This document shows, piece by piece, positions 3,174-25,259 of a stretch of 64,000 nt of DNA; positions within the stretch are counted from its first letter, which is position 1, and every line of letters starts with the position of its first letter. The notes under the pieces were generated by a model, which was given only the letters and a program-made list of their open reading frames with translations, made no database searches and was not told the DNA's origin. Position numbers and translations under genes: made by a program. Where the stretch lies: IMG/VR virus record IMGVR_UViG_3300025536_000010, positions 124,001-188,000 of that record. One strand, given 5' to 3'.

Positions 3174-3189
3174 CACAAGGAGGTGTACA

Positions 3190-10096: not shown

Positions 10097-11932
10097 ATGT
10101 CCTTTGAACGCTTCCTCACACTGGTACAGGAGAGGGACCGGGTTAAAGCCGGGACGGTCAACAAACCGCTCCGCACCACGGACCAGAACGTCCGTTACCT
10201 GTGGGACGTCCTCCAGGCCGCCGGCATCGGCTCGACCGTCTACCTGCACCGGCAGACGGTGGAGCCCGAAGTCCACAAGGGCATGGCTGTCTGGCTCAAC
10301 CCGGACACCACGCGCTTCGAGCGCTGCCTGGCCTTCGCTGACGTCGACGGCGCCACGGGCGTCGTTTACACGGCCAACTCGGCTCAGGTCTGGGGCGTCG
10401 TCACGGAGAAGATCAACGCCACGCTGGCCGAGATCCTCTTGTTCGGCGTTGTTGACCTGAACCTGTCCGAAGCCGTTGCCGACAGCGACGACCTGGGGCC
10501 GGGCGTCTACTACCTCTCGTCCAGCCAGCCCGGCAAGCTGACGCGGCAGAAGCCACCTGTCTCGGTGGCCGTGCTGCGCGCCACCACGGACGGCAAGGTG
10601 TTCGTGATGCCGCAGTTCGTGGACTTCCTCGACCGGCACACGCACTACCGTTTCAGCTTGACCTGCGCCCCGGCTGGTGACACGACGCCGCCGGCTCCGG
10701 GCGGCACACACGCGATCACCAGCCCCAACGTCCTGACGCAAGGTTGGCTGCCGGCTGGACACAGCAGCTTCAACGGTAAAGCCCCGCCCGGAGCCGTCTT
10801 TGGCTACAACCTGGAAGCACACACGGCCCTCAAGAACCTGTGGCCGCCTCAACCGTTCAACAACGCCTACCTGGAGTTCGACCGCGGCGAAGACTCGGCC
10901 CTGGGCTTCATCGGCGTGCCGCTGGGCAGCAACGGCCTGTGCGTCGCCGACCGTTATGGCATCTGGTGGATGTCCAACTGCTACGGGGACGTGCCCTGGC
11001 CTACAGCGCTCGACACCGAAACGTCTGACAGCTACTCGGACTCTTCCGATGTGGAGTGCCCGCGGCATCTCCAGATGGCCATGCAGCTGTGGTTCACCAA
11101 GATCAATTTTGCCACCGACTTGACGTCGGTACTGTCGCTGCATTCGGGCGACAACCGCATCCGAGTCCGCTGCTACGGCAAGCCTGACCAGGTGGCCAGC
11201 ACCGGGCACCTAGAACTGTTCCTCAACCTGAACCTGGTGGTCAAGGACGACCAGCCTGGCTACCTGGCTTTCAAAGACTTCGACCCGGAGAAAGCAGAGT
11301 TCAAACGCGGCCCGGTGGTGGAAGGCTTCTACAAGCTCTCCAACAACGTCACCCTGGTCGGCACCAAAGTCGGCGAGCGCGAGATCGGTGACACCACCTA
11401 CGATCTCTACCAGGGCTTGGTCGGTATCGCTGTGGCCCCGGAAGAGACGCTCGAACTGCCGGTGCAGCTGGTACGGCTCAAAGGCGTCGAGGAAGACTTC
11501 TTCCAGGATCTGATGTATCTGGCCTTCCGCCCAGCTGTCCAGGAGGAATACCGCGCCAAGCTCGTCGTGCCGTCGGATCTAGCTATCCCCAACCCGCAGA
11601 TGAAGATCCGCATGGCGATTATGGGCCGCGCGGCCGGCACGCTGCCGGTCCTCACGGTAACGGCGCGCCGTGCCGCCAGACCCGAGGACGGCCTGGGTAC
11701 GCCGCTGTCCCTGCCGCTGACTGGCGCAGAGTTCTCGGTCACCATCGACACCCAGGGCGTACTGACCCTGGCAAACCAATACGTCGAGGCCGAGAGCGAA
11801 CCGTTTGACGTCGCGCCAGGGGATACAGTGTTTTTCACCGTCAGGCGCCTGGCCACGGACGGCTACGGAGCCGACGTGGGTATCCTGCGGCAGTCGGGCA
11901 TTTTGCTTTCAGGAGAAGACGATGAGGATTAG
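10097..11932 (+). CDS. putative tail structural protein
   Basis: 611 aa; SD AAGGAGG; GVYYLSSSQPGKLT motif seen in virion proteins. Confidence 0.65.
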   Translation: MSFERFLTLVQERDRVKAGTVNKPLRTTDQNVRYLWDVLQAAGIGSTVYLHRQTVEPEVHKGMAVWLNPDTTRFERCLAFADVDGATGVVYTANSAQVWGVVTEKINATLAEILLFGVVDLNLSEAVADSDDLGPGVYYLSSSQPGKLTRQKPPVSVAVLRATTDGKVFVMPQFVDFLDRHTHYRFSLTCAPAGDTTPPAPGGTHAITSPNVLTQGWLPAGHSSFNGKAPPGAVFGYNLEAHTALKNLWPPQPFNNAYLEFDRGEDSALGFIGVPLGSNGLCVADRYGIWWMSNCYGDVPWPTALDTETSDSYSDSSDVECPRHLQMAMQLWFTKINFATDLTSVLSLHSGDNRIRVRCYGKPDQVASTGHLELFLNLNLVVKDDQPGYLAFKDFDPEKAEFKRGPVVEGFYKLSNNVTLVGTKVGEREIGDTTYDLYQGLVGIAVAPEETLELPVQLVRLKGVEEDFFQDLMYLAFRPAVQEEYRAKLVVPSDLAIPNPQMKIRMAIMGRAAGTLPVLTVTARRAARPEDGLGTPLSLPLTGAEFSVTIDTQGVLTLANQYVEAESEPFDVAPGDTVFFTVRRLATDGYGADVGILRQSGILLSGEDDED

Positions 11933-12052
11933 CAACATCCTGGGGCCAGACGGCAAACCGTACGAGGTGCCGGACCCAAAACCTGAGTTCTTGCTGGAGT
12001 TCTACGTCTACGAGACAGGGAGCTTCGTTGACCCCTACTTGAGAGTTGCACC

Positions 12053-12454
12053 ATGTCCTACTGGAACGGTTGGCCCCGAGAATGGGACTACAACGAGAAG
12101 CTCATCTGGCGAGCCCTCAGAGCCCTCCAGCGCTTCCCCGACAAGTGGCTAAGCGCGAGGACCGTTACCGCCCTTATGGACCCGCCCTGCCACCGGAGTC
12201 ACGGCCGCGGCTTCTGCCGGGCGCTGTACAAGATGGGCTACCTCGACCGCGACGACTGCGGCCACTATCGGGTGAACGCGCTCGGCGTACGGCACAGCCG
12301 CATGAACGACGAAGTACGCGAGTTGATGCGGCGGCGGGCTTACCGGCCCGTGCCGCTGCCGGAGGGTCTGGAGCACCTGTTCACGGACGAATCCCAGGCG
12401 CTCAGCAAGGCGCGGAAGGAGAGCACGGATGCCTCTCGGGCACTGGAACGTTGA
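12053..12454 (+). CDS. putative winged-helix protein
   Basis: WLSARTVTALM...RALYKMGYLDRDDCGHYRV pattern. Confidence 0.45.
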   Translation: MSYWNGWPREWDYNEKLIWRALRALQRFPDKWLSARTVTALMDPPCHRSHGRGFCRALYKMGYLDRDDCGHYRVNALGVRHSRMNDEVRELMRRRAYRPVPLPEGLEHLFTDESQALSKARKESTDASRALER

Positions 12455-13385
12455 ATGGCTGAACCACAACAGCCAACGAAGCTACCCCCTGGCGGATGAC
12501 GCCAGCGGCCTCGACGACAGCGGGGACTTCGAGCTTCCTGACGACTTCATCGTCGAACTGGACCTGCCGGTCCACGCCGGCATGGACGTAGACCCGGCGC
12601 GCTTCTTCATCAAACACATCGGGGCCTACTCGACCGGCTACGCTGTCATCGTCGGCTACCAACCCTCTGCCGGTGACGCTATCACAGTTGCCTCCGCCCT
12701 GATTCCGCGCCAGACGCACGCACGCAACACGGCCTACGCCCTGGGCGGCATCGAGCCCTTTGACGACACCGTGGGCAAGCTCGTCATCGGCAAGCTCGAC
12801 AACATCGACGAGCAGCCACCAGGCTACTGGAACTTCTCGCTGGAGAACGCCAGACTGGAACCCGACGCTGTCCGGCCGATCATTCGCGGTGTCTCCAGCG
12901 TCGTCTGCGTCAACGGCGACCAACGCTCGCTGCCGCTGCGTGGTGTGCTCGAACTCCAGGCCGGGCAGAACATGCAAATCATCCCGATCCTAGTGAGCGG
13001 GCAAGACCCAATCATTCGTTTCAACGCCATCGACGGCGAGGGTACAATCGACGAGTGCGTCTGCGAGGGCGACGCGGCTCCCACGGACCCGATCAAGCGC
13101 ATCAACGGCGTCGCCCCGACGCCTACCGGCGACTTCAACATCATCGGCACGGACTGCCTCCAGATCGAAGTGATCGCCAACGGTATTCGCCTGGTCGATA
13201 AATGCTCGGCCCCGTGTTGCGACTGCAAAGACCTGGAACGCATCACCCGCGACCTGGAACGCCTCAACAGTCAGGCCGCAACCGTCAACGACTTCGTCGA
13301 ACGCCTCCGAGACTCGGTCAACACGTTCGACCTGATCGTCCTCGGGTCCAAACTGGGCGACCGCGGCTGCGTCACCTGCGAATAG
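12429..13385 (+). CDS. Cys-rich tail protein, paralog 1 of 5
   Basis: EWLNHNSQRSYPL N-terminus; IKRINGVAP..GDF motif; PCCDC followed by coiled coil. Confidence 0.7.
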   Translation: MPLGHWNVEWLNHNSQRSYPLADDASGLDDSGDFELPDDFIVELDLPVHAGMDVDPARFFIKHIGAYSTGYAVIVGYQPSAGDAITVASALIPRQTHARNTAYALGGIEPFDDTVGKLVIGKLDNIDEQPPGYWNFSLENARLEPDAVRPIIRGVSSVVCVNGDQRSLPLRGVLELQAGQNMQIIPILVSGQDPIIRFNAIDGEGTIDECVCEGDAAPTDPIKRINGVAPTPTGDFNIIGTDCLQIEVIANGIRLVDKCSAPCCDCKDLERITRDLERLNSQAATVNDFVERLRDSVNTFDLIVLGSKLGDRGCVTCE

Positions 13386-13394
13386 GAGGCCAAG

Positions 13395-14948
13395 ATGTCG
13401 CACCCCTTCGGCCGCCAACCTATCGGCCCCAACCAGCCGCCCGGCGGCGGTACAAACTATCCGTTTGTTGCGCCCGAGGACGATGTGCGCCAACTCCTCG
13501 GCGACTTCTACCTGTCTTACGAGGACGACACCTGCGCCTTCGCGCTACCGCTGCGCGTCACCTGGCTCTACGGCTTCGGCGACAACGTCGTGGCTGCGCC
13601 GTCTGGTACGCCCACGCCGGTCCACGCCCAAGACCTGGTCGTCAAAGACGCTGAGGGCGTTACGGTCTTCGACTCGACCCAAGCGGTCGATTTCAAGACG
13701 ACGGTCTGGGGCGGGCGCCTGCTGGTACTGGAGTGGACCACGGAGACACAGGTCTGCCGCTGCACTGTCCACACCGCCTGGGACGCCGAGGATACGCCGC
13801 TGACCTACGACAACCACATCGTCCCGGAGAACGGCGAACTCGACGCCCGGACCTACAACCGTCTGCCCGGCCGTGTAAAAGCGTTTCGAGTCGGCCTCCA
13901 GACGATCACCGGCAACGTCCAGTTCGACGCCGGTTTCAACATGGCTATCGCCGGCAGCAGCACGCCGCGCACGGATGGCACGTTGTTCGTCGACCGCGTC
14001 GACATGGACGCCGTCCCCGGCGCCGGGCTCGGTCGCCAACCAGGCTGCGAGGAAGCCGAGGTCGTCACGCGGCTCATTAACGCAATCGGCCCCGACAAGG
14101 GCGGCAACTTCATAATCGAACTGGATGAGTGCTACCGCGGGCAGCTAGCCGCTTTCGCCCAGGATACCGAAGACGGGCGCACCGCCGAGTACGGCGCTGA
14201 CATCTACACGGACGAAGAGGCCAAAAGCGCACTGAGAATCTTCAACGACTGCCAACCGTGCTGCCCCTGCGATTACTACGTCCGCACCTACAAGGGCCTC
14301 AAGCGCGTCTGGGACAAGTGGAAAACGGCCGGCGTGGCCGCCGAAGAGGTCCGCGACCTCTACAAGGACAACGTCAACCGCTGGGAGGAACAGCGGCAAT
14401 GCCGCATTGAGCACCCGGCACGACTGGTCGTCAGCGCCGACAAGCAGTGCCGTGTGTTCGTGGGTGGCACCTACTGTAACTTCTCGAAATGCTGTCTGCG
14501 GGACATCGAGTTCCGTTTCACGTTCGAGTGGATACGCAACGGGCAAACAGAACCCGAGCCGGTCCATGACCTGCGCGTGTTCGATTCTTTTGTGAACGCC
14601 AGTTACACCGAAGGGGAGGAGCCGATCACGCCGCTGGTGACTGCCTCAACCGTCCGTTTCCTGATCGACTACGCGGACCCGCAGGCGATCACCCTGGTCA
14701 AGTTCCGGGTCTGCATCACCTGCGAGCGCGGCGACACGCTCAAGGTGTGGTTCAGTGTCCACGTCCCTGACCCTGGCCTGGACGCAGCCGGCGAGCCGTG
14801 CGAGTTGCCAGTGATAGAGATCCCGGCGCACCTGATCGAGATCTGGCTGAACGACGGGTTGCCGGAGCCCGAGCCAGCACGGGCGCTCGTAGTGAAGCTC
14901 GCACCGCTCGACCCAGTCAACCCGGTTTCCAGCTGCGTCGTTTGCTAA
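13395..14948 (+). CDS. Cys-rich tail protein, paralog 2 of 5
   Basis: TNYPFV; LINAIGPDKGGNF; CQPCCPC followed by coiled coil. Confidence 0.7.
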   Translation: MSHPFGRQPIGPNQPPGGGTNYPFVAPEDDVRQLLGDFYLSYEDDTCAFALPLRVTWLYGFGDNVVAAPSGTPTPVHAQDLVVKDAEGVTVFDSTQAVDFKTTVWGGRLLVLEWTTETQVCRCTVHTAWDAEDTPLTYDNHIVPENGELDARTYNRLPGRVKAFRVGLQTITGNVQFDAGFNMAIAGSSTPRTDGTLFVDRVDMDAVPGAGLGRQPGCEEAEVVTRLINAIGPDKGGNFIIELDECYRGQLAAFAQDTEDGRTAEYGADIYTDEEAKSALRIFNDCQPCCPCDYYVRTYKGLKRVWDKWKTAGVAAEEVRDLYKDNVNRWEEQRQCRIEHPARLVVSADKQCRVFVGGTYCNFSKCCLRDIEFRFTFEWIRNGQTEPEPVHDLRVFDSFVNASYTEGEEPITPLVTASTVRFLIDYADPQAITLVKFRVCITCERGDTLKVWFSVHVPDPGLDAAGEPCELPVIEIPAHLIEIWLNDGLPEPEPARALVVKLAPLDPVNPVSSCVVC

Positions 14949-14958
14949 GGAGGCGTCG

Positions 14959-16656
14959 GTGCCGATTCGTAACCTACACTGGACCAACCGCAACGACGGG
15001 ATCAAATACCCCGTCGACGATCAGGCAACGGCCCTGGACGATGCCGGTGCGCTCCTGCCTTCGGAGATTCTCGCGGACTTGTTCCTACGCTGGCCGAAGC
15101 ACCTCGGCGACTACGCTTTCCTGTCGTCGGTCAGTGTCACGCGCTCCTTGGTCACCGTCACGATCCAGGCGGCCCGCACGCTCGACGACGAGGATTTCAC
15201 CCCGCTGGCCGTGCTGTCTGTCACCAAGCCGGTCCAGGACGGCCGCGTCTACGCGCTCCAGCCGCAGGTCCAAGGCGTCGGCGGCTGGGTCGTTTTCGGC
15301 CGCGGCGTCCAATTCGATCCAACAGACGGTCTGGTCTACCGTGGTCGTTTCTCCTCACCACGGCAAAGTCGCCTGGCGCCGCGCGCGGCTCGGCCTTACC
15401 GTGGCTTGCCCGTTCACAGCGCCCAGGTCCAAAACGCGGCCACCAGGCTAACAGGCGTAGTCCTGCTGCGCGGCGTCCTACCCGTGCGCGTGGTCAAAGA
15501 GGAGCGGACGATTGACGGCGTACTGCGCGACTGCATCGTCATCCGCCTGGTCGACGTGGCCGGCGTCGACGGTTTTGCCGTACCGGCGGCAGCCCGCGAG
15601 ATCTCCGGCTTCAAAGAAGCCAGTTCTTTTCAGGAGTTCGCCGGCCCCTGCGCCAACCGGCCCGAGTCTGGTACTTGCGGCACGCCGGAACCTATCGAGT
15701 TCGTCAACGCCGTGGCCCCTGACTGCAACGGCGTCCTCACCCTGGAGTTCCGCGGCTGCGCCGCCGTAGCCCAGGTCTTGGGGACGTGCGGCATTATCGT
15801 AGACTGCGACCTGGGCCTGGCCCGAGCCTGCTTGCCGCCCTATATCCCCAGCAGCGACGGCAAACTGCCCAGTGAATACGACCCCATTGTTGTCGAACCG
15901 CCCATCGACCCGCCGCCACCGGACCCAGAGCCCGGCGCGTCGGAGTCGTTGGTGGTACTGGGCGAATTGCCTTATATCGACTGCTTCCACGACGGCGTGG
16001 CCGATGACTTCGTGAACAAGTATGGCCTGTGGCAGCTGGTCGAGGACGACAGTCCCGCGACCATGTGTGACGACGAATCGGTGCCTGTGTCTGAGTCCCT
16101 ATCGGCGTCGACATCCGCGTCGGTCGGTAGTGAGCGCATCTTGCAAAGCCTGGAGGCGTACACGACAGCCAGCCGCAACATCACGGTCTGGGAGGGCTTT
16201 GACGACAGCACGGTCTACCGGCGGATCATGACCGACGTGAAACTGGCCCTCGGCCCGGCTGGGTCCAAAACCAACGCCGGCATCGTCCTCAACTACCGGC
16301 AGGCGTCGCCAAGCAGCACGGCCTACCTGTACCACCTGGTCGAGATCGACTACGAGACACAGGAGTTCCGCATTGTTCGCTTCAACGGCACTAACACTGT
16401 GCCAGTAGTCCCGGTGTCGGTGCCAGGTATCCACCCGGACGCCTGGTATCGGATCGACGTCAACGTCGTGCCTGGGGCGACGCCGGGGCAGATCACGATC
16501 ACGGCGCAGCTGACGTCCATCTCCGAGCCCGGCCTTATCGACGTCACGCTCAGCGTGACCGTCAACGATTACGGGACGACGCAGGGTCGGTTCGGTTTCC
16601 ACACCAACCGCGCCCTGGCTCGGTTCAGCTACTTCTACTTGCGGGAGTTTCCGTAA
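14959..16656 (+). CDS. Cys-rich tail protein, paralog 3 of 5, with C-terminal beta-sandwich (lectin-like) domain
   Basis: HWTNRNDGIKYPV; FVNAVAPDCNG; C-terminal NAGIVLNY...WYRIDV...GRFGF. Confidence 0.7.
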   Translation: MPIRNLHWTNRNDGIKYPVDDQATALDDAGALLPSEILADLFLRWPKHLGDYAFLSSVSVTRSLVTVTIQAARTLDDEDFTPLAVLSVTKPVQDGRVYALQPQVQGVGGWVVFGRGVQFDPTDGLVYRGRFSSPRQSRLAPRAARPYRGLPVHSAQVQNAATRLTGVVLLRGVLPVRVVKEERTIDGVLRDCIVIRLVDVAGVDGFAVPAAAREISGFKEASSFQEFAGPCANRPESGTCGTPEPIEFVNAVAPDCNGVLTLEFRGCAAVAQVLGTCGIIVDCDLGLARACLPPYIPSSDGKLPSEYDPIVVEPPIDPPPPDPEPGASESLVVLGELPYIDCFHDGVADDFVNKYGLWQLVEDDSPATMCDDESVPVSESLSASTSASVGSERILQSLEAYTTASRNITVWEGFDDSTVYRRIMTDVKLALGPAGSKTNAGIVLNYRQASPSSTAYLYHLVEIDYETQEFRIVRFNGTNTVPVVPVSVPGIHPDAWYRIDVNVVPGATPGQITITAQLTSISEPGLIDVTLSVTVNDYGTTQGRFGFHTNRALARFSYFYLREFP

Positions 16657-17495
16657 TGGCCCAGATCCTGTTCCCAGAATGGCGCAGGCAGAACGAGCCG
16701 ACCAAGTATCCGCTGGCGGAACAGGCCACCATGACCGCCCTGGACGGTCGTGTGCTAGTCGAAGGTACGTTCCTGGACGCCGCCCTGTACCCTATCGGAG
16801 CCAAAGCCGGCGTCTACCTGGCAGCCGTCACGCTCGATCACCAGAACGCTGTCATGGAACTGGGCGACCCGTTCGACAAAGCCCTGGCCTCGGCCACCTT
16901 CTCCTTGGTTGACCCGCCGGACGAGGTCGTCTTCGTCGACCGTTACGGCAGGCCGGCAGGCGTTATCGTCAGTGAGTCGACCCGGCTGGGCATCTTTCAG
17001 TCCTGGGGCGTCGGCCGGCACGAGTTCGCTCAGGAAGGCTCCGAGTTTGCTGCCACCTGCGTTATACCCACACCAGAGGTCGGCGTGCGCGGCTTCCTCC
17101 TGGAGACGGGCGAGTTGTTCGTAGGGGACGTGTGGCTGGTAGGCAGCGACGGCGTCGTCTTGCGCACCACGAACATCTCGGTGCCGGCCAGCTGCGGGCA
17201 ACCGGAGCGCACCGTCCGAGCCATCCGCGTCGACATCGTCGGCGACCCACTATTTCGCCGCCGGCTGTGTCAGCCGAACGACCTGTTCGACACGCCACGG
17301 TTCGTACGCACGGTGCGCGTCGTCGGCCCCAACTACACCTTCGAGTGTCCGCCGGACGCCGCCGGCAACCTCATGTTGGCCGCTGGCAACGGCCTGGCGG
17401 CAGACACGGTATTGCGGATCGCTGTTACCCCCAACGGGCTCAAGATCGGCTCGGTCGGCGAGTCGCAGAGTACCGAGAACGTGAACGCCTTCTAA
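16656..17495 (+). CDS. tail protein, paralog 4 of 5
   Basis: EWRRQNEPTKYPL; PPDAAGNL. Confidence 0.7.
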   Translation: MAQILFPEWRRQNEPTKYPLAEQATMTALDGRVLVEGTFLDAALYPIGAKAGVYLAAVTLDHQNAVMELGDPFDKALASATFSLVDPPDEVVFVDRYGRPAGVIVSESTRLGIFQSWGVGRHEFAQEGSEFAATCVIPTPEVGVRGFLLETGELFVGDVWLVGSDGVVLRTTNISVPASCGQPERTVRAIRVDIVGDPLFRRRLCQPNDLFDTPRFVRTVRVVGPNYTFECPPDAAGNLMLAAGNGLAADTVLRIAVTPNGLKIGSVGESQSTENVNAF

Positions 17496-17509
17496 AAAGT
17501 GGTTTATAG

Positions 17510-18502
17510 ATGTCCGAGAACTTCTACAACCTGAACGCCAACCGCTGCTACCCCTTCGTACTTCGCACAACGGGGCGCCCGGAGGACGGGCCGAGCACGC
17601 TGCTGAACCTGGCCCACGCCTGCGTGGTCGACGCCGGCTTCGTCCTCGCGGCCAAAAGTGGTTTCGCGTCGGGCGACCACACCGTCTACCTCAACCAGGT
17701 CCGGCGGCATGGCAGCACTTTCTATTTCGACTTCGCCTCGGACGCGCCTGAACTGTTCGAGGTGCCTTTGACGTTCACCCGCAACGTCGCCGATCCCGAC
17801 TACACCCTCAGCTTTACAGACTCGGGCGAGGTCGGGCTGTCTGAGTCGAGCGCATCGGGTAGTATGAGCCTGGGCGACGAATGTCTCGAACCGCTCTGGT
17901 CTGGTTTCCTGGTTTCGGGCAAGATGAGTGCCCTAGCACTGCTGCTGCCCGTGAACGGTACGATCACGAGGGGCGCCGGCGGTGCCGTCGTCGAACCGGC
18001 CTTGCTCCAGAACCTCGCTGGGACGTATGTCACGCGAGTCGGCCTGGCCAATGACGACCGCACCAGGGCGGACGCTCCCGAGGACTGCCCGGACATCGTG
18101 TTCCCTTACCCGACCGGGGTCATCCACATCCACACGAACTGCGTGGTGGGCGATCTGGTGTTCGTGGCAGGGGTCAACGCCGAAGTCCGGCAGAGTGACA
18201 CGGACAACGCTATCAGCTTTGGGGCCTCAGTCGGGGCCGGGGCGGGGCAGCCGTGCGACACCGTGGCCAGGTTCCCAGGGGAAGTGCCGCCCGAAGGCAG
18301 CAACCTCCTGGAAGGTGGGCTCCGCTGCAACGAGGTGTTGCGGTCGATCAACGGGATCGGTGGTCGGCAGTTCAACCTGATTGCCGGCCTGGGGGCCACC
18401 ATTGCCTCGGTGCCCGAGGAGAACAAGGTCGTCGTCGACCTCAACATGTTCGGCCTCGTGACGTGCTTCGACTCGATCTCCGAGGTATCGGAGAGTTGCT
18501 AG
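17510..18502 (+). CDS. tail protein, paralog 5 of 5
   Basis: FYNLNANRCYPFV; LRSINGIGG. Confidence 0.7.
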   Translation: MSENFYNLNANRCYPFVLRTTGRPEDGPSTLLNLAHACVVDAGFVLAAKSGFASGDHTVYLNQVRRHGSTFYFDFASDAPELFEVPLTFTRNVADPDYTLSFTDSGEVGLSESSASGSMSLGDECLEPLWSGFLVSGKMSALALLLPVNGTITRGAGGAVVEPALLQNLAGTYVTRVGLANDDRTRADAPEDCPDIVFPYPTGVIHIHTNCVVGDLVFVAGVNAEVRQSDTDNAISFGASVGAGAGQPCDTVARFPGEVPPEGSNLLEGGLRCNEVLRSINGIGGRQFNLIAGLGATIASVPEENKVVVDLNMFGLVTCFDSISEVSESC

Positions 18503-18512
18503 GAGGCCACGG

Positions 18513-21500
18513 ATGGCAGACCACCCGGCGTTCGACCCCACCAAATGCGACGTGGAGCCGGTCGAGCGGATTCCCTGCGAAGACCTGCTCGTCGATCCGC
18601 GCGTGCCGGACCCGCCGAAAGAGATCCCGGACTGCCCAGCGACCGAGATCGAGAAGCTGCCGCCGGACCCGCCCTGCCCGGAGTTGAACGTCAAACGGCA
18701 CCCGGATTTCCCGTCGCCGCAAGTGCCGGCGTACATGGACCACGACATCTGCGAAACGCCCAAGTTAAACTTCAAAATCGAGAAGGTCGGCTGCTGCGAC
18801 TTTGATTTTGTCATCGACCTGTGCATCCCTTGCCCGGACCTGGAACCGCTCTACCCGTTCATTAAGGGCGTGCCTTTCACGTTCAGCGAGTCGACGCTGA
18901 CCTACGGCTTCATCCGCAAGCCAAACTGCGACTTCGAGTTCAGGATCGACCTGGAGATCCACTGTCCGTTTATCGGCCCGCTCGGGTTCGCCGTGAACAA
19001 GGGGGTACGTTACGGCCCGGCGCTGCTGACGTACAGCTTCTCCAAAACGGGAGCTTGCGATTATTTCCTGAACATCGACGTCTCCGTGCCTTGCCCGGCC
19101 GTTGGACCTATTTTTCCTGGCGAAGTGACGCCCATTCCTTTCAACGGCGTCAGCACGCTCGGCTTCCTCGTCTACTGGTTCAATCGCGGCGTAAACTGCA
19201 ACTACGATCTGGACATTTTTGCGGCAGCGCCGTGCCCGCCTATTGGCCCAAACGAGCCGCTGACCAAGCTGATCCCGTACAGCAAGCAGCAGACGATCCG
19301 CTACTACATGAGGCGTGCGCAAAACCCGGACGGCTCGCCGAAGTGCGAGTACGAACTCATCATCGACGCCCGCATCAAGTGCCCGCGCATCGAGCCGATC
19401 AACCTCAAGACGGTGCCGCTGACCCAGGTAAACACTGCGCCCAAGCTGCGCTACATCTTCCTGAAAAACGAGACGACCTGCGAATACGAACTGGTTATCC
19501 AGGGCGAATACCACTGCCCGAAGATGCTGCCAGACATCGCGGCGCCGCAGGTGCGGCCGATCCCGTTCGGAGCGGTGCAGCAGATCGTCTACTTCTTCCG
19601 CAAGCAAGGCATCTGCGACTACTTCCTGGACATCAACGCCAACATTATCTGCCCGCCGATGAAGCCAGAGGTCTGGAAGAACGTCAACCTCCAGCTGGTG
19701 CAGGTGCCGCCCAAGCTGCGCTTCCGCTTCGTCAAGATCCCGCCCTGCGGCTGGGAGTTGGAGATCGAAGGCGAGTGGCACTGCCCGATCATCAAACCTA
19801 TCGAGGCGGCCAAGGGCGAGCGCGGCGTCAAATTCGGCGACCCGGGGCAGATCCGCTGGTGGTTCGTCAAGATACTGCCCTGCGAGTTCGAGTTGAAAAT
19901 CGAACTCGACGTGCCGTGCCCGATCCTCAAACCCATCGTCGAACAAGAAGTCGACCTGGTCAAAGTGTTTGAGGCGCCCAAGCTATTTTTCAAGTTTGTC
20001 AAAGACCCCGCCGCCGATAAGTGCGAGTTCACCCTGGACATCTCCGGGGAATGGTTCTGCCCCATCGTGGACCCGCCGGAAGACGCCCCCGGAGTCGCGC
20101 CGCTAGGCGGCGGCGCGGGCGGCGAAATACGCTGGTGGTTCAGACGGGAAGCGCCTTGCCACTACGAGCTAATCATCGAAGGCGAGTGCCCCTGCGTAGT
20201 CATGCAGCCGGTCGACTTGACCAGCATACCGATCACCTTCACGAACAACGACGAAGGCTGGTTCGACTTCTATTTCGAGAAAGACCCGGACGACTGCATC
20301 TGGACGCTCGTCGTAGAAGAGATCCGCGTGCCGTGCCCCAAGATCGGGCCGACCGTGCTCGTCACCAAAGACGTTCACCCGGAGGACGTGCCCGGAGCCT
20401 TGGGCACGCTGGAGTATGTGTTTGTCAAAGCCGGAGCCGGCTGCCAGTACGACCTGGAAATCGACCTCATCACTCCTTGCCAGGAACACCTGCCCGATTG
20501 CGCGGCACCCGACGTCAAGCCAGTCCTCTGTTCGGGAACGTGCGAAGGCGAGTTGACCTACTGCTTCACGAAATACAACGAGTGCGATTACGATCTCAGC
20601 ATCGACGTCACCGTGCCGATCTGTCCGCCGGTCTGTACCTTCGACATCGAGATAAACTGCCACGACGAACCGTTTACGCCGACCGGCACCTGCGATGTTA
20701 CCGTCGTCAACGGTTGCGAACTCCAGTTCGACATGGTCTTGGACCTGGTCTGCGGCGGCGACGGCGATCAAGGCGCACAGGGGCATCAAGGCGCGCAAGG
20801 TGGAGCCGGCGGTGCCCAAGGACCACAAGGCCACCAGGGCGATCCTGGCGCTCAAGGCGATCCTGGCGACCCCGGACCACAAGGCGATCAGGGGCACCAA
20901 GGCGACCAGGGCGAAAAGGGCTGCGGCACCTGGCAAGGCCAGTGGCTGGCGGCTACCGCCTACGCAGCGTGCGACATCGTCTTCAACGACGGTGAGACGT
21001 TCCTCTGCACCGACGACCACACCTCGGCAAGTGGTGATGAGCCCGACATAGGAGCAACCTGGGCGACCAAATGGGACCGCATGGCCACCGGCATCAACTG
21101 GCGCGGTCCCTGGACAACGGCGACTGTCTACGGCGAGCACGACGCTGTCGAGAACAACGGCTCGTCCTACATCGCCAAGCTGACGCACACTTCCAGTGCG
21201 GGCACGGAACCTGGCGTGGGCGGCGGCTGGAACGTCGCCTGGGATCTGATGGCGGCCAAGGGAGCACAAGGCGCACAAGGCTCCCAAGGTGACCAAGGCA
21301 ACCAAGGTGTCCAGGGCAGGCAAGGCAACCAAGGCTTCCAAGGAAATCAGGGCACCCAAGGCTTCCAAGGGAATCAGGGCCTCCAGGGCCTCCAGGGCTC
21401 GACCGGCTCCAAACTGGCCATCGTGCCCTACTGGGACGAGTACGTTGCCCTGGCCTGCGTCGAAGCCCCCGAAGTACGCTTCGAGGACATCTTGCGAGTG

Positions 21501-21809
21501 CAGTTCAGCGGCGACCACCGCGACACGGTCATCGTTGACATTGACCCGGTATTTCTCGGCGTCTGCGAACCTGGTAGCATCGTTCCCGTCTCGGCTGTAC
21601 CCGCAACGCCGATCCCGGTTGGCGTGCAGGTCTGCGGCGGGCTAGTTTACGTCCGCGTCACGCGGAGCAGCGCAACGCCGCGCTTTCAAGGCGAAGTGAT
21701 TGTAAAACTGTCGGGCATCCGGCGGGATCACACCTGGCGCTTCCGGCGGCATACCGAAGACGACATGGTCGCCAACAACGCCTTCTGGCAAGGCTGGAAA
21801 AAGGAGTAA
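18513..21809 (+). CDS. tail fibre: ~15 Cys repeats, collagen-like segments, two CBM5/12-like modules, C-terminal chaperone-like domain
   Basis: C-x11-CP repeats; GxQ triplets ~20764-20920 and ~21261-21410; WQGQWLAATAY..D.V and WRGPWTTATVY..DAV; LACVEAPEVRFED. Confidence 0.8.
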   Translation: MADHPAFDPTKCDVEPVERIPCEDLLVDPRVPDPPKEIPDCPATEIEKLPPDPPCPELNVKRHPDFPSPQVPAYMDHDICETPKLNFKIEKVGCCDFDFVIDLCIPCPDLEPLYPFIKGVPFTFSESTLTYGFIRKPNCDFEFRIDLEIHCPFIGPLGFAVNKGVRYGPALLTYSFSKTGACDYFLNIDVSVPCPAVGPIFPGEVTPIPFNGVSTLGFLVYWFNRGVNCNYDLDIFAAAPCPPIGPNEPLTKLIPYSKQQTIRYYMRRAQNPDGSPKCEYELIIDARIKCPRIEPINLKTVPLTQVNTAPKLRYIFLKNETTCEYELVIQGEYHCPKMLPDIAAPQVRPIPFGAVQQIVYFFRKQGICDYFLDINANIICPPMKPEVWKNVNLQLVQVPPKLRFRFVKIPPCGWELEIEGEWHCPIIKPIEAAKGERGVKFGDPGQIRWWFVKILPCEFELKIELDVPCPILKPIVEQEVDLVKVFEAPKLFFKFVKDPAADKCEFTLDISGEWFCPIVDPPEDAPGVAPLGGGAGGEIRWWFRREAPCHYELIIEGECPCVVMQPVDLTSIPITFTNNDEGWFDFYFEKDPDDCIWTLVVEEIRVPCPKIGPTVLVTKDVHPEDVPGALGTLEYVFVKAGAGCQYDLEIDLITPCQEHLPDCAAPDVKPVLCSGTCEGELTYCFTKYNECDYDLSIDVTVPICPPVCTFDIEINCHDEPFTPTGTCDVTVVNGCELQFDMVLDLVCGGDGDQGAQGHQGAQGGAGGAQGPQGHQGDPGAQGDPGDPGPQGDQGHQGDQGEKGCGTWQGQWLAATAYAACDIVFNDGETFLCTDDHTSASGDEPDIGATWATKWDRMATGINWRGPWTTATVYGEHDAVENNGSSYIAKLTHTSSAGTEPGVGGGWNVAWDLMAAKGAQGAQGSQGDQGNQGVQGRQGNQGFQGNQGTQGFQGNQGLQGLQGSTGSKLAIVPYWDEYVALACVEAPEVRFEDILRVQFSGDHRDTVIVDIDPVFLGVCEPGSIVPVSAVPATPIPVGVQVCGGLVYVRVTRSSATPRFQGEVIVKLSGIRRDHTWRFRRHTEDDMVANNAFWQGWKKE

Positions 21810-21813
21810 TCGA

Positions 21814-23151
21814 ATGCTGGTCAGCGTTTTCACCCCGAGTCACAACCCCGAGTGGCTGGCCGACTGTTGGGCCTGCTTGCTGGAGCAAACGTACAAGGAA
21901 TGGGAGTGGATCATCGTCGCCAACGGCGACAACACCGACACAGTCGTCCTGTCTGTAGAGTTACTCTGCGGCGACGATCCGCGTGTCCGTGTCATCCGCT
22001 CCACCGAGACGAAGATCGGCGCGCTCAAACGGCTCGCCTGTGAGCAGGCGCTAGGCGACCTTTTCCTGGAGTACGACCACGACGACCTGCTCACCCACGA
22101 CTGTCTCGAAGCCGTGGTCGAGGCCGCCCGTGGGGCGCCCAAGGCCGCCTTTATCTGGTCCGACGACGTTAGCTGCGATTTCAGCGGGCAGAGCAAGCGC
22201 TACTCGGCTGACTGGGGCTGGCGGCAGACCCAGTGGACCTACAAGGGCAAGGAATACTGGATCAACGAGCATCACCCGATCACGGCTCGGTCCATGTGTG
22301 AGATTCTCTACACCCCGGACCACGTCCGCGTCTGGACCAGAGAAGCCTACCGACTGGTCGGCGGGCACAACAAGGAGATGCCCTACGGCGACGATCACGA
22401 ACTCATGGTGCGCACCTACCTCAAGGGCGTACCGTTCATTCATATCGCCAGGCCGTTGTACTTCCACCGGCAAGACGGCAAGAGCACCTGCCAGGTCAAA
22501 GTCAACGAGATCCAGCAGATCTCGCGGCAGAACCGCGACAAGTACCTGTACGACCTGGTCAAGGAATGGTGCCGCCGCGAAAAGCTGCCGATGTACGACC
22601 TGGGCGGCGCCCACGGTTGCCCGCTCGGCTACATCCCCATCGACATCAACCCCGCAGTCAAGCAGCACCCAGGCGGCATCTGCTGCGATGTCCTGCCCAA
22701 CGTCGACAACGAGGACGTCCGCGGCCTGAGCGGCCTTTACGCGCACCTCAAGCCAAACTCGGTCGGCTGCTTCCGGGCCTTCGACTTCCTGGAGCACATC
22801 CCCGGGCCGCAGATCCCGAAGCTGATGAACATGCTCTACGATCTGCTGGTGCCCGGCGGCTGGCTGCTGACTATGACGCCGGCCGTCTGCGACGACAACG
22901 GCCGGGCCGGACGCGGGGCCTATCAAGACCCCACGCACGTTTCGTTTTGGTCCAGCAACAACTTCTGGTACTACACCAAGAAGGACCAGGCCAAGTACGT
23001 CCCGGAGATCACCTGCCGCTTCCAGGCGGCGCGGCTGGCAAACCTCTACCCCAGCAAGTTTCACCACACGCATCTGATCCCCTACGTCCTCGCGGACTTG
23101 ATGGCTTTGAAAGACGGCAATGCGTACGCGCCGGGGCCGAAGGAGATCTAG
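21814..23151 (+). CDS. GT2 glycosyltransferase fused to a SAM-methyltransferase-like domain
   Basis: VSVFTPSHN...LLEQTYKEWEWII, YDHDDLL, GDDHEL; then YDLGGAH, AFDFLEHI, LVPGGWL, QDPTHVSFW. Confidence 0.85.
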   Translation: MLVSVFTPSHNPEWLADCWACLLEQTYKEWEWIIVANGDNTDTVVLSVELLCGDDPRVRVIRSTETKIGALKRLACEQALGDLFLEYDHDDLLTHDCLEAVVEAARGAPKAAFIWSDDVSCDFSGQSKRYSADWGWRQTQWTYKGKEYWINEHHPITARSMCEILYTPDHVRVWTREAYRLVGGHNKEMPYGDDHELMVRTYLKGVPFIHIARPLYFHRQDGKSTCQVKVNEIQQISRQNRDKYLYDLVKEWCRREKLPMYDLGGAHGCPLGYIPIDINPAVKQHPGGICCDVLPNVDNEDVRGLSGLYAHLKPNSVGCFRAFDFLEHIPGPQIPKLMNMLYDLLVPGGWLLTMTPAVCDDNGRAGRGAYQDPTHVSFWSSNNFWYYTKKDQAKYVPEITCRFQAARLANLYPSKFHHTHLIPYVLADLMALKDGNAYAPGPKEI

Positions 23152-25259
23152 TGCATACGTTCATCTTCAACAACAAATGGGCGCTCGGTGACACGGTCTG
23201 CCTCTCAGCCCTGGTGCGCGACCTACACCGAGCGTACCCCGGACAGTACCGCGTGCTGCTGGCCCAGCACTACCAGTCCTACTGGAAATACCTGAGCATC
23301 GCCAAGGCCCTGCCCGACAACGAGCAAGCCGCGGTGAAAGGCCAGGTGGTCCAGTTAGAGTACCTGTCAGGCATCAGGGCGGCCGGCAATGGCTCCAAAA
23401 GCCATTTTTTGGCTTACTGGCACCGGGCGTTCGAGAACGCCACCGGCCTGCGGGTGCCCTGCACCGAACCCAAAGGCGTCATCGGCTTGGCACCGGAGGC
23501 GCAGACGTCGCCCTACCCGTTCCGCTATTGGGTCGTCGTGGCCGGCGGCAAGCACGACGCCACAGTCAAAGTCTGGTACACGCATCGCTACCAGCAAGCC
23601 GTAGACACGCTCCAGGGCCTGGGCCTCAAGTTCGTCCAGGCCGGGGCTGACTTCAACAAACACTTTCACCCGCGGCTCCAGCGCGTGGAACAGTCCATCG
23701 GCAAGACCGACGACATTCAGGATTTCTTCCGCCTGATCTATCACGCCGAAGGCGTCCTCTGCGGCGTCACCGGAGCCATGCACATCGCCGCGGTCTTCGA
23801 CAAGCCCTGCGTCGTCGTGGCCGGTGGCCGGGAGGAGCCCTGGTGGGAGGCGTACACCAATTGTTACTTCCCCGAGTCTTTTGGCCCAGCCTGCGCGCCG
23901 GTGAAAGTCGAGCACACTTTTCTGCACACCCTGGGCCTGCTCGATTGTGGCTGCGGCAACCTCAACAAGGGCTGCTGGCGGGACCGGACAGTGCCCATCG
24001 AGCGCACGGACCACTCCAACGCCGCCCAGATCCACAAGCTATGCAAGCGGCCGATCCGCGACGCTCCCCAGGCCGTGCCCGAGTGCATGCACCTGATCGA
24101 AGTTGACCACGTCGTCGAGGCTGTCATGAACTACTACGAGAAAGGCATCTTGCCGCCCATCGGCAAGCCCACCCGCAAGTACGCCGAAGCGATAACGCTC
24201 GACTACCCAATGCAGCCGTTAGTCGGCACGCCGAAAGCGCCTAACCCGATCAAGGAACTCTGGGACAAGTCAGTCGCATCGGCGACGCCGATAGATCTGG
24301 CCCAGGAAAGAGAGAGACACAAGATCCGCGGCATCGGCACGAACATCACCCCACTGCTGCGCGACCTGCCGCCGCTGCCCAGGGAAGCCACGCACCTCAT
24401 GGTCAACCCGCCGACGCTGCGCGAGTTGGAAAAATGGGGCAGAGAGATGCCAAGGGAGGTTCAATCGCGGGTCGGGGAAGACCCTGACCTGGCAGTTCTC
24501 GACCACCCCTACATCGGCGGCAAGTTCACCGTGTTCGTCCTGGGATACGGGGAGCACCTGGCGCTGGTGAAACGCTGCCTCGGGTCGATCCTGGACAACG
24601 CTCCCTCAGCCAGGATCGACCTGCGCGTCGCCCTCAACCAACCGAGCAAGCCCATGCTCGACTACATCACCGGCTTCGACAAGAAGACTGTGACACGGGT
24701 CTATCTCGACCACGGCGACCGGCGGAAATACCCGGCCATGCGAGAGATGTTCTGGGACGACAGCTGCCCTATCGAAACCAAATACGTCCTGTGGTTCGAC
24801 GACGACAGCCACGTCGTCGACAAGAAATGGCTGGTCGAACTCGGCCACGTCATCGTCGGCAACCACCCGCACGGCAGTCGCATGTTTGGCTGCAAGTACA
24901 TTCACGACCTGATGGGCTTCCGCCGGCGCGGCTTTGCCCCTGAGAAGTGGTTCCAGGCAGCCCGCTGGTGGCAAAGTAAGCCGCTGCACCTGGCCAAAGG
25001 CGCGCGTACCGGCCCCAACGGCAGCGAGATCGTCTTCGCTTCTGGCGGCTTCTGGGCCTTGGCCACAGAAGTCATCCGCAAAGCAGACATCCCGGACGCG
25101 CGCTTGAACCACAACGGCGGCGACATCACCATCGGCGCCCAGGTCCACCAGGCCGGGTTCAAGGTTTGCGATTTCGCCCGCGGCAAGAAGCCGGTGTGCT
25201 GGTCGGACGCCCAGCGCCGCGGCTATCACGAGGCGTTCCCCTGGAGTGAGGTAACGTGA
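23151..25259 (+). CDS. GT9 (heptosyltransferase-like) plus GT2-like glycosyltransferase fusion
   Basis: GTG 23151 after AGGAG; ALGDTVCLSALVRDLHRAYPG, LIYHAEGVLCGVTGAMHIAAVFDKPCVV; C-terminal YVLWFDDDSH and GGD. Confidence 0.8.
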   Translation: MHTFIFNNKWALGDTVCLSALVRDLHRAYPGQYRVLLAQHYQSYWKYLSIAKALPDNEQAAVKGQVVQLEYLSGIRAAGNGSKSHFLAYWHRAFENATGLRVPCTEPKGVIGLAPEAQTSPYPFRYWVVVAGGKHDATVKVWYTHRYQQAVDTLQGLGLKFVQAGADFNKHFHPRLQRVEQSIGKTDDIQDFFRLIYHAEGVLCGVTGAMHIAAVFDKPCVVVAGGREEPWWEAYTNCYFPESFGPACAPVKVEHTFLHTLGLLDCGCGNLNKGCWRDRTVPIERTDHSNAAQIHKLCKRPIRDAPQAVPECMHLIEVDHVVEAVMNYYEKGILPPIGKPTRKYAEAITLDYPMQPLVGTPKAPNPIKELWDKSVASATPIDLAQERERHKIRGIGTNITPLLRDLPPLPREATHLMVNPPTLRELEKWGREMPREVQSRVGEDPDLAVLDHPYIGGKFTVFVLGYGEHLALVKRCLGSILDNAPSARIDLRVALNQPSKPMLDYITGFDKKTVTRVYLDHGDRRKYPAMREMFWDDSCPIETKYVLWFDDDSHVVDKKWLVELGHVIVGNHPHGSRMFGCKYIHDLMGFRRRGFAPEKWFQAARWWQSKPLHLAKGARTGPNGSEIVFASGGFWALATEVIRKADIPDARLNHNGGDITIGAQVHQAGFKVCDFARGKKPVCWSDAQRRGYHEAFPWSEVT

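What the first reader, a model, noticed from the sequence alone, without database searches (positions are those of the whole stretch)
18513..21809. Fibre with ~15 copies of an unrecognised C-x11-CP repeat plus collagen and carbohydrate-binding modules
Seen: units of ~43-50 aa ending in a strand-like C-[DE]-[FYW]-x-[LF]-x-I-x5-C-P (CDFEFRIDLEIHCP, CEYELIIDARIKCP, CEFELKIELDVPCP and others, ~18795-20753), each preceded by an aromatic strand (LTYGF, IRWWF). Then come GxQ collagen, two CBM5/12-like modules, more collagen and a C-terminal domain resembling fibre intramolecular chaperones. Paired Cys in a cytoplasm-assembled fibre suggests inter-chain metal sites or disulphide locking after release. 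I do not recognise the repeat family.
Basis: partly seen in the sequence, partly recalled or inferred. Interest (0 to 1): 0.62.

Follow-up and report, generated by a model that had tools for sequence, protein, structure and literature searches.

The report
Phage tail fibre with cysteine-ladder repeat
This is the tail-fibre gene of an uncultured 235-kb subsurface phage, whose shaft is built from 15 copies of a previously undescribed 45-residue all-beta repeat carrying two conserved cysteines that appear to pair across the joints between repeats.

Summary
ORF 18513-21809 (+, 1098 aa) has 15 C-x11/12-C motifs with a 43-52 aa period. Fourteen are full units by HMM and the 15th is degenerate. After them come G-x-Q collagen, two CBM5/12 modules, more collagen and a 131-aa C-terminal domain.

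The repeat matches nothing in Pfam, PHROGs, NCBIfam, PDB sequences or three structure libraries. It is not unique: a profile search of 1.84 billion proteins found 43 apparent relatives, and a C-terminal search added one more. All are unnamed. Nearly all share a conserved N-terminal anchor, and they carry 1-19 units. Four relatives checked sit in the same slot of the same conserved structural gene order.

In internal units the first Cys is kept in 97% and the second in 95%. The two Cys of one C-x11-C motif flank a predicted ~10-residue strand, so they cannot touch. Loss patterns instead couple the "CP" cysteine of unit n-1 with the first Cys of unit n (p = 7e-8).

My reading is a rigid fibre shaft stapled at each joint, most likely by disulphides formed after release. 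The chemistry is inferred, not shown. The C-terminal domain models as a lectin-like beta-sandwich knob, not an intramolecular chaperone. I rate it a new variant of a known kind, of moderate interest.

The parts
18513..21809 (+). Tail-fibre gene, 1098 aa (P0001)
   Evidence: ORF. PHROG tail-fibre families hit residues 747-988 (phrog_5073, E 3e-30). It holds the same slot in a conserved structural gene order in four other loci.
18513..18680 (+). Conserved N-terminal domain (aa 1-56), presumed baseplate anchor. It ends in the invariant Cys55-Pro56, which supplies the first 'CP' partner.
   Evidence: In the 44-protein alignment A4, M1, F7, C12, P35 and C55 are invariant and I38, C41 and P56 are >=90% conserved. 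N-termini are listed. The anchor role is inferred.
18681..20627 (+). Fourteen full repeat units (aa 57-705), 43-52 aa each: P-x-[ILM]-x-P linker, short strand A, strand B (L-x-Y-x-F-x-K), turn, Cys1, amphipathic strand C, P-Cys2-P
   Evidence: alignment A1; P4, C32 and C44 invariant. The AF2 model of units 7-9 has pLDDT 86.9 with three strands per unit.
20628..20753 (+). Fifteenth, degenerate Cys-rich unit (aa 706-747), ending C735-x11-C747-G at the start of the collagen
   Evidence: Read from the sequence. The unit HMM does not call it.
20754..20927 (+). Collagen-like segment 1 (aa 748-805, 7+12 G-x-y triplets with one break)
   Evidence: PF01391; triplet count.
20925..21086 (+). CBM5/12-like module 1 (aa 805-858)
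   Evidence: PF02839 best stretch covers residues 810-844.
21087..21248 (+). CBM5/12-like module 2 (aa 859-912)
   Evidence: Second PF02839 stretch. phrog_5073 covers 859-966. The boundaries are my reading of the sequence.
21261..21413 (+). Collagen-like segment 2 (aa 917-967, 17 G-x-Q triplets)
   Evidence: PF01391 best stretch covers 917-966.
21414..21806 (+). C-terminal domain (aa 968-1098): predicted beta-sandwich with a terminal helix, presumed distal receptor-binding knob
   Evidence: Shared by 15 of 44 family members, usually directly after collagen. AF2 pLDDT is 84.6. Best structural neighbours are fibre or tailspike tips and H-type lectins, Z 5.7-7.6.
10097..18502 (+). Six conserved upstream structural genes (611, 318, 517, 565, 279 and 330 aa) that always precede the fibre gene
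   Evidence: The same order and sizes occur in L002/L003, L004, L005 and L006. None has a Pfam or PHROG hit. The 330-aa neighbour is 46-52% identical across loci.
21814..23151 (+). Glycosyltransferase family 2 plus methyltransferase gene immediately downstream
   Evidence: PF00535 E 1e-16 and PF13489 E 2e-6. A GT2 and/or GT9 gene follows the fibre gene in all four other loci examined.
23160..25259 (+). GT9-like (heptosyltransferase family) gene; the start codon is approximate
   Evidence: PF01075 E 2e-4, 21.2 bits, just under the 22-bit cut-off. Orthologous GT9 genes are in L002, L004 and L005.

Best explanation
P0001 is the long tail fibre (receptor-binding protein) of an uncultured, baseplate-bearing jumbo phage from a subsurface metagenome. 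It has three functional parts.

1. A 56-residue N-terminal domain, conserved across the whole family, docks the fibre on the equally conserved upstream structural proteins.

2. A shaft of 15 tandem ~45-residue units forms the middle. Each unit is a three-stranded antiparallel beta-meander. Its long last strand has a strictly alternating pattern: Cys, aromatic, Leu, Ile and Val face one way, and Asp/Glu face the other. The strand begins with Cys1 and ends in P-Cys2-P. The Cys2 of one unit pairs with the Cys1 of the next, so every joint between units is stapled and the long strands are chained end to end into a stiff rod. The pairs most likely oxidise to disulphides once the virion leaves the reducing cytoplasm. 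Shaft length is set by unit number, which ranges from 1 to 19 in relatives.

3. A swappable distal part follows: collagen triple helix, two CBM5/12 carbohydrate-binding modules, collagen again, and a lectin-like beta-sandwich knob. The collagen forces a trimer, and this part binds a host-surface glycan.

Shown here: the repeat and its conservation, the family, the synteny, the domain hits, and the cross-junction co-loss of cysteines.

Inferred: the trimeric packing of the shaft, the disulphide chemistry, intra-chain versus inter-chain pairing, the anchor role and the receptor role.

The confidence given is for the whole statement. That it is a tail fibre with an undescribed shaft repeat I hold at about 0.85, the cross-junction pairing at about 0.6, and disulphide chemistry at about 0.45.
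For: Fibre identity:
- PHROG tail-fibre hits.
- A Baseplate_J gene lies upstream in the same gene block.
- The gene holds a fixed slot after six conserved structural genes in four other loci.
- The N-terminus is conserved while the C-terminal modules vary.

Repeat and family:
- 14 HMM units in this ORF only.
- 45 hits in 1.84e9 representatives; two are Cys-poor false positives.

Fold:
- AF2 on a 59-row in-register alignment gives pLDDT 86.9, with three strands per unit and strand C lying between the two Cys.
- The profile shows a strict hydrophobic/acidic alternation.

Pairing:
- Junction table: 215 both kept, 2 and 5 single losses, 6 double losses; p = 7e-8.
- Within a unit there is no association (p = 0.22).
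- Cys2 is kept in 217 of 228 internal units but only 32 of 64 terminal units (p = 5e-16).
- The invariant C55-P56 precedes unit 1.

Trimer: two collagen runs in P0001, and collagen in 13 of 44 members.

Distal knob.

Precedent for disulphides in phage tails: cyanophage Pam3 fibre-to-wedge bonds (PMC9942802).
Against: - No coordinates were available, so no Cys-Cys distance was measured.
- The trimer prediction gave no verdict.
- The co-loss statistic rests on about five independent events in four lineages, and P0002 and P0003 are close kin.
- Cys1 survives in 5 junctions where its proposed partner is gone, so it may also have another role.
- The phage encodes no recognisable thioredoxin, DsbA or Erv1 oxidase (the Erv1 control rang nowhere, so that one is uninformative).
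- The source is a subsurface metagenome, where the extracellular milieu may be too reducing for spontaneous disulphides.
- Structural matches of the C-terminal knob are only Z 5.7-7.6, in the range the tool calls common.
Confidence: 0.5

Rival explanations
1. The paired cysteines are metal ligands rather than disulphides. In a parallel trimer, each junction would bring six thiolates (two per chain) near the three-fold axis. That would give a stack of about 15 metal sites along the shaft, a thiolate analogue of the His-Fe sites in the T4 gp37 fibre tip.
For: Both Cys lie in phase with the inward-facing hydrophobic residues of strand C. Co-loss of the two Cys fits shared ligands as well as it fits a disulphide. 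A subsurface, probably anoxic source and the lack of any phage oxidase make spontaneous disulphides less certain.
Against: No other conserved ligand (His, or a fixed Asp) accompanies the Cys pair. No known metal-binding family or fold matched. The shaft trimer itself is unproven.
Confidence: 0.15
2. The cysteines take part in no covalent or metal chemistry. They are conserved small hydrophobic core residues that stay reduced, and the shaft is held together by its hydrophobic face alone.
For: The fold must already be stable in the reducing cytoplasm where it assembles. Some relatives lack several Cys2 (P0024, P0027). The habitat may be reducing.
Against: Conservation of 95-97% for two positions in units otherwise 15-50% identical is much higher than for any hydrophobic position, where Ile is interchangeable with Leu and Val. 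Correlated loss across the junction, and the selective dispensability of Cys2 at array ends, are not expected for independent core residues.
Confidence: 0.2
3. Consecutive units pack face to face in pairs within a single chain, forming ~90-residue six-stranded sandwich (Ig-like) domains, beads on a string. The shaft is then not a trimeric intertwined rod.
For: There is a weak two-unit super-repeat: units 6, 8 and 10 are 43-50% identical to each other but 21-41% to their neighbours, and mean identity is 35% at lag 2 against 29% at lag 1. Each unit has one hydrophobic face that must be covered.
Against: Relatives have odd unit numbers (3, 5, 7). Strands are 9-13 residues long, longer than typical Ig strands. 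No Ig, FN3 or other sandwich matched across two units; every structural alignment covered one unit only, with Z <= 3.8.
Confidence: 0.1
4. It is not a virion fibre but a host-derived or secreted collagen-like adhesin carried by the phage.
For: The collagen segments resemble bacterial Scl and Lcl adhesins at the repeat level.
Against: Those hits are far below the family cut-offs (52 bits against 325-500) and cover only G-x-y triplets. No signal peptide or anchor was seen in the sequence by eye. The gene has a fixed position inside the structural module of five related phage contigs. Tail-fibre PHROGs match it.
Confidence: 0.03

Closest known systems
Modular phage tail fibres with collagen-like segments (for example PHROG 5073, 6320 and 1806, 'tail fiber' / 'collagen like minor tail')
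   Same: Residues 747-988 match these families (E 3e-30 to 1e-11). Shared features are a trimer-forcing G-x-y segment, carbohydrate-binding modules and a distal knob, with a conserved N-terminus and an exchangeable C-terminus.
   Different: None of these families covers residues 1-745. The Cys-bearing shaft repeat has no PHROG, Pfam or NCBIfam counterpart.
T4 gp37 / gp34-type and R-pyocin fibres (metal ions on the three-fold axis)
   Same: All are long repeat-built beta-structured fibres in which a conserved chemically active side chain recurs along the shaft. The C-terminal knob of P0001 resembles the R2 pyocin fibre foot (Z 6.6, rmsd 2.5 over 76 residues).
   Different: Those fibres use His (HxH) and iron (my own knowledge, not tested here). 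P0001 has Cys pairs and no HxH motif. The shaft model shows no sequence or fold similarity to them.
Disulphide-locked phage tails (cyanophage Pam3 fibre-to-wedge bonds, PMC9942802; siphovirus tail-tube inter-ring cystines, PMC13576161)
   Same: Cysteines in cytoplasm-assembled tail parts form covalent links in the released virion. In Pam3, DTT detaches the fibres. The invariant Cys12 and Cys41 of the N-terminal domain, and six invariant Cys in the upstream neighbour, could play a similar role.
   Different: Those cases have a few single Cys at interfaces between proteins. Here a pair recurs about 15 times inside one repeat array.
Thrombospondin type-1 (TSR) and similar disulphide-capped three-stranded extracellular repeats
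   Same: Both are elongated repeats of ~45-60 residues with three antiparallel strands, stacked aromatic and basic residues, and Cys at the ends. One unit aligns to the CCN3 TSP1 domain (Z 3.0, 44 residues).
   Different: Z 3.0 is noise level and there is no sequence signal. TSR disulphides lie within a repeat, whereas here the pairing appears to bridge repeats. This is an analogy only.
Peptidase_S74 intramolecular chaperone domains of fibres and endosialidases
   Same: The position is the same: the extreme C-terminus of a trimeric fibre.
   Different: There is no Pfam match at E <= 10. The predicted fold is a beta-sandwich plus one helix. No S74 structure appears among the top 50 matches of either search.

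Membership tests
Phage tail fibre / receptor-binding protein (general class) | Encoded within the tail or baseplate structural module | tested here: met
   A Baseplate_J gene lies at 1521-3170. An unbroken same-strand gene block leads to the fibre. The order of six upstream genes is identical in four other loci.
Phage tail fibre / receptor-binding protein (general class) | Sequence similarity to annotated tail-fibre families | tested here: met
   phrog_5073 at E 3e-30, plus more than 10 other tail-fibre PHROGs, all on residues 747-988 only.
Phage tail fibre / receptor-binding protein (general class) | Homotrimer | tested here: inconclusive
   Two collagen runs imply a trimer for the distal half. 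The three-copy prediction of the shaft gave no verdict.
Phage tail fibre / receptor-binding protein (general class) | Present in the virion and needed for adsorption | not testable with these tools
   The phage is uncultured, and no cultured relative was found.
Collagen triple helix repeat (PF01391) | Score above Pfam's gathering cut-off; uninterrupted G-x-y triplets | tested here: met
   44.4 bits against 27.2. Runs of 7+12 and 17 triplets.
CBM_5_12 (PF02839) | Score above Pfam's gathering cut-off | tested here: met
   31.5 bits on the whole protein and 40.1 bits on residues 800-915, against a cut-off of 26.2; two stretches.
CBM_5_12 (PF02839) | Binds chitin or another glycan through surface aromatics | not testable with these tools
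   Needs a binding assay or a glycan array.
Peptidase_S74 intramolecular chaperone | Pfam PF13884 match and an autoproteolytic Ser-Lys site | tested here: not met
   No Pfam or PHROG hit for residues 968-1098 at E <= 10. The beta-sandwich model has no S74 structure among its top matches.
H-type lectin / fibre-tip beta-sandwich knob | Fold match clearly above background | tested here: inconclusive
   Z 7.6 (Pam1 tailspike C-terminus), 7.0 (discoidin I) and 6.6 (R2 pyocin fibre) over 70-77 residues. Fibre tips recur in the list, but Z stays below 8.
Any described repeat family (Pfam, PHROG, NCBIfam, PDB) for residues 57-747 | Significant sequence or fold match | tested here: not met
   Pfam and NCBIfam gave 0 hits at E <= 10 and E <= 1. 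The best PHROG hit was E 0.4. The PDB profile search gave 0 hits. Foldseek on PDB gave best E 0.43 and on BFVD 0.16. VIA-align wide gave best Z 3.8, and the Atlas gave TM <= 0.36.
HxH metal-binding fibre repeats (T4 gp37 type) | Recurrent HxH motif on inward-facing strands | tested here: not met
   The unit profile has no conserved His; His appears only occasionally at the position before Cys2.

The most novel reading that the evidence does not exclude
The shaft is a new trimeric fibre fold in which Cys2 of one chain bonds to Cys1 of the neighbouring chain at every joint, or the six thiolates there hold a metal. That would give a rod cross-linked at about 15 levels. It would be a redox- or metal-switchable fibre whose stiffness or attachment changes between the host cytoplasm and the subsurface environment.
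Probability: 0.25. Interest if true: 0.75.

Novelty: new variant of a known kind. Interest (0 to 1): 0.55.

Why it matters
Fibre shafts are built from a small number of known repeat architectures: triple beta-helix, beta-spiral, coiled coil, collagen and the His-Fe needle. A confidently modelled 45-residue beta-meander unit with a conserved cross-junction cysteine pair, and no sequence or fold relative, would add one more.

It would also give a clear example of how a cytoplasm-assembled virion part can be locked after release. The unit number varies from 1 to 19 on a constant anchor, so the family is a natural length series. That makes it suitable for studying how fibre reach affects adsorption, and possibly useful as a stiff modular spacer in protein engineering.

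The family is rare (44 clusters among 1.84 billion representatives) and was found only in metagenome or uncultured-genome assemblies; the five loci examined belong to one syntenic phage group. The finding is therefore of specialist rather than general importance.

Tried and rejected
- The word-index homologue search on residues 57-745 found only the query.
- tblastn against 50,697 cultured-phage records found nothing for the repeat region or for two conserved neighbours.
- The IMG/VR pattern scan with the protein found nothing.
- The ESM Atlas feature search gave no usable hit.
- Complex prediction with three copies of units 7-9 scored 0.67, 0.00 and 0.00. The verdict was 'no answer', so it is not used as evidence either way.
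- A first pseudo-alignment of overlapping four-unit windows (A2) was discarded, because MAFFT aligned overlapping windows out of register. It was replaced by non-overlapping three-unit blocks (A3).
- P0040 and P0045 from the big search were rejected as false positives. They have 0 and 2 Cys and match only the first half of the profile.
- Phage-encoded Erv1, thioredoxin and DsbA were not found. The Erv1 control rang in no genome, so that search is uninformative.
- Cys density across stop-to-stop ORFs of the genome was not informative, because this GC-rich genome has many spurious frames.
- I could not obtain model coordinates, so no Cys-Cys distances were measured. That step is simply missing.
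Full report
**Where the window lies.** The window is bases 124001-188000 of a 234,886-bp virus record that CheckV rates as complete. The only public run holding the gene is labelled a subsurface metagenome. The region has about 62% G+C, so many long spurious frames overlap the real gene on other frames and strands. The 1098-aa frame at 18513..21809 (+) is the one with homologues and domain hits.

**The observation.**
- A regex finds C-x11-CP or near variants starting at residues 95, 139, 182, 229, 278, 323, 368, 412, 457, 504, 549, 595 and 691. Adding C644-x11-C656 and C735-x11-C747 gives 15 motifs with a period of 43-52 residues.
- Cutting the chain after each 'CP' gives 14 alignable units (aa 57-705) and a degenerate 15th (706-747). 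Pro4, Cys32 and Cys44 are invariant in the unit alignment.
- An HMM of the units scores 14 units (i-Evalues 2e-17 to 3e-12 in the 13 rows printed) and finds nothing else in the phage genome.
- Units are only 15-50% identical, and no DNA-level tandem repeat is detectable there. The array is therefore ancient and maintained by selection.
- Units 6, 8 and 10, and units 9 and 11, are closer to each other than to their neighbours, a weak two-unit super-period.
- Downstream, Pfam confirms Collagen and two CBM_5_12 stretches above their cut-offs. The collagen runs have 19 and 17 G-x-y triplets, mostly G-x-Q.

**Is the repeat known?** No match was found in any library searched.
- Pfam, PHROGs and NCBIfam give nothing for residues 1-745, even at permissive thresholds.
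- A profile of the unit finds no PDB sequence.
- An AlphaFold2 model of units 7-9, built on a 59-row in-register alignment of three-unit blocks from the family, is confident (mean pLDDT 86.9). It is all-beta, with a short strand A and a long B-C hairpin per unit.
- That model matches nothing. Foldseek on PDB gives best E 0.43, and on BFVD best E 0.16. Exhaustive VIA-align gives best Z 3.8, always on a single unit. The ESM Atlas gives TM <= 0.36.

**Relatives.**
- The word-index search, cultured-phage tblastn and the IMG/VR scan found nothing.
- The exhaustive profile search of 1.84 billion cluster representatives found 45 proteins at E <= 1e-3, of which 12 are at E <= 1e-30. Two are Cys-poor false positives.
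- With P0002, which the C-terminal search found, the family has 44 members besides P0001. None carries an informative name.
- They have 1-19 units. Apart from the fragment P0034 and a few with a longer or divergent lead-in (for example P0044 and P0033), they begin with the same N-terminal motif. F7, C12, P35 and C55 are invariant, and C41 and P56 are >=90% conserved.
- C-terminal parts differ. Thirteen of 44 have collagen, only P0001 has CBM5/12, and 15 (P0001 among them) share the 125-130-residue C-terminal domain.
- Four relatives were looked up: P0041 (236-kb contig, held as two loci), P0017 (126 kb), P0003 and P0008. In each, the gene follows the same six structural genes (about 605, 317, 550, 545, 275 and 330 aa) and is followed by a GT2 and/or GT9 glycosyltransferase, exactly as in the window.
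- This is the behaviour of a receptor-binding fibre in one clade of large uncultured phages: a constant anchor, a shaft of variable length and exchangeable tips.

**The cysteines.**
- In 278 homologous units, the first Cys is kept in 97%.
- With a tolerant spacing window, the second Cys is kept in 217 of 228 internal units but in only 32 of 64 units that end an array (p = 5e-16).
- In the model, the segment between the two Cys of a unit is a continuous 10-residue strand (model residues 33-42, between C32 and C44). These two Cys are about 35-40 Angstrom apart and cannot be partners.
- Presence and absence of the two Cys within a unit are not associated (p = 0.22).
- Across the junction, Cys2 of unit n-1 and Cys1 of unit n are strongly associated: 215 both kept, 2 and 5 single losses, 6 double losses; odds ratio 129, p = 7e-8.
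- The double losses occur in P0002/P0003, P0012, P0022 and P0024, which is about five independent events.
- The invariant C55-P56 just before unit 1 supplies a partner for the first unit's Cys1.
- The meander topology fits. The ~31 residues between the partners go out, up (strand A and a loop) and back down (strand B) to the starting level, as a closed loop requires. This is inference from the secondary-structure string; I had no coordinates.
- The true covalent module is therefore probably CP-x(~31)-C, with the 11-residue strands chaining the modules together.

**Packing.**
- The unit profile alternates strictly. Strand B has L, Y/F and F/I/V on one face and T/R/K on the other. Strand C has C, F/Y/W, L/F, I/L/V, I/V/L, V/F/I and C on one face and D/E on the other.
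- Such a one-sided sheet must be covered. Given the two collagen segments, which require three chains, the simplest solution is three sheets around a common axis with the cysteines facing the core. This is inferred.
- The three-copy complex prediction gave no verdict.
- If the shaft is straight, 15 units of about 4 nm would give a rod of about 60 nm, plus about 30 nm of collagen. This is an estimate only.

**C-terminal domain.**
- It has no Pfam or PHROG match.
- It models with pLDDT 84.6 as a beta-sandwich followed by a helix.
- Its best neighbours are the C-terminal tip of the cyanophage Pam1 tailspike (Z 7.6), discoidin I and Helix pomatia agglutinin (H-type lectins, Z 7.0 and 6.2), the R1 and R2 pyocin fibre feet (Z 5.9-6.6), and the tips of LKA1 gp49, AP22 gp53/gp54 and phi297 gp61.
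- These Z values are in the range the tool warns is common. The recurrence of fibre tips still supports a distal binding knob.
- Nothing supports an S74-type intramolecular chaperone.

**Chemistry.**
- Disulphide locking of phage tails has precedent. Pam3 fibres are bonded to the wedge and fall off in DTT (PMC9942802), and a siphovirus tail tube is cross-linked by cystines (PMC13576161, abstract).
- The phage encodes no recognisable thioredoxin or DsbA, and it comes from the subsurface.
- A metal-site reading, or a reading in which the thiols stay reduced, therefore remains open.
- I put disulphides after release first, because only two ligands per chain are conserved and they behave as a pair.

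**Verdict.** This is a genuine, well-supported tail-fibre gene whose shaft repeat is undescribed, rare, confidently foldable and carries a conserved cross-junction Cys pair. The interpretation needs correcting on which cysteines pair and on the C-terminal domain. I rate it a new variant of a known kind, with moderate interest.

Noticed in passing
window 21814-23151 and about 23160-25259; L002 12264-14348; L004 13575-17311; L005 10519-12714; L006 9974-11275: A GT2 (fused here to a methyltransferase) and/or a GT9-like glycosyltransferase follows the fibre gene directly in all five loci. They may glycosylate the fibre or virion, or modify the host surface.
   Followed up: partly
window 3094-4134: A 346-aa protein with a Peptidase_M10 (matrixin) domain (E 1e-29) and a weak PG_binding_1 domain lies just after the Baseplate_J gene. 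It may be a virion-associated cell-wall or matrix protease.
   Followed up: no
window 17510-18502 (330 aa) and orthologues in L002, L004, L005 and L006: The gene just upstream of the fibre is 46-52% identical across loci and has six invariant cysteines. Cys use may therefore extend to the fibre's docking partner, as in the Pam3 wedge.
   Followed up: partly
window 19386-20171 (units 6-11, aa 292-562): There is a weak alternating A/B super-repeat. Units 6, 8 and 10 are 43-50% identical, and units 9 and 11 are 44% identical. Adjacent units are 21-41% identical.
   Followed up: partly
window 20478-20753 (aa 656-747); also aa 80, 94, 104, 559: Extra cysteines occur beyond the two per unit: 12 Cys in the last ~90 residues of the array, a 'CC' doublet at the start of unit 1 that is conserved family-wide, and a 'CPC' in unit 11. 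The total is 45 Cys in residues 1-747, an odd number, so at least one is unpaired within a chain.
   Followed up: no
P0002 residues ~260-540 and P0003 ~300-585 (L005): Two relatives carry a ~290-residue non-repeat insertion in the middle of the repeat array. The array resumes after a fresh 'SCP' motif.
   Followed up: no
L002/L003 14886-15898: A related 236-kb contig encodes a dGTP diphosphohydrolase N-terminal domain protein (PF18909) and a dCMP deaminase a few genes downstream of the fibre. This hints at modified nucleotide metabolism in this phage group. The equivalent region of the window was not checked.
   Followed up: no
window 18227-21518, other frames and the minus strand: Long overlapping ORFs (for example 20169-21518 minus, 449 aa; 18765-19946 minus, 393 aa) are most likely by-products of the high G+C content and not genes.
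   Followed up: partly
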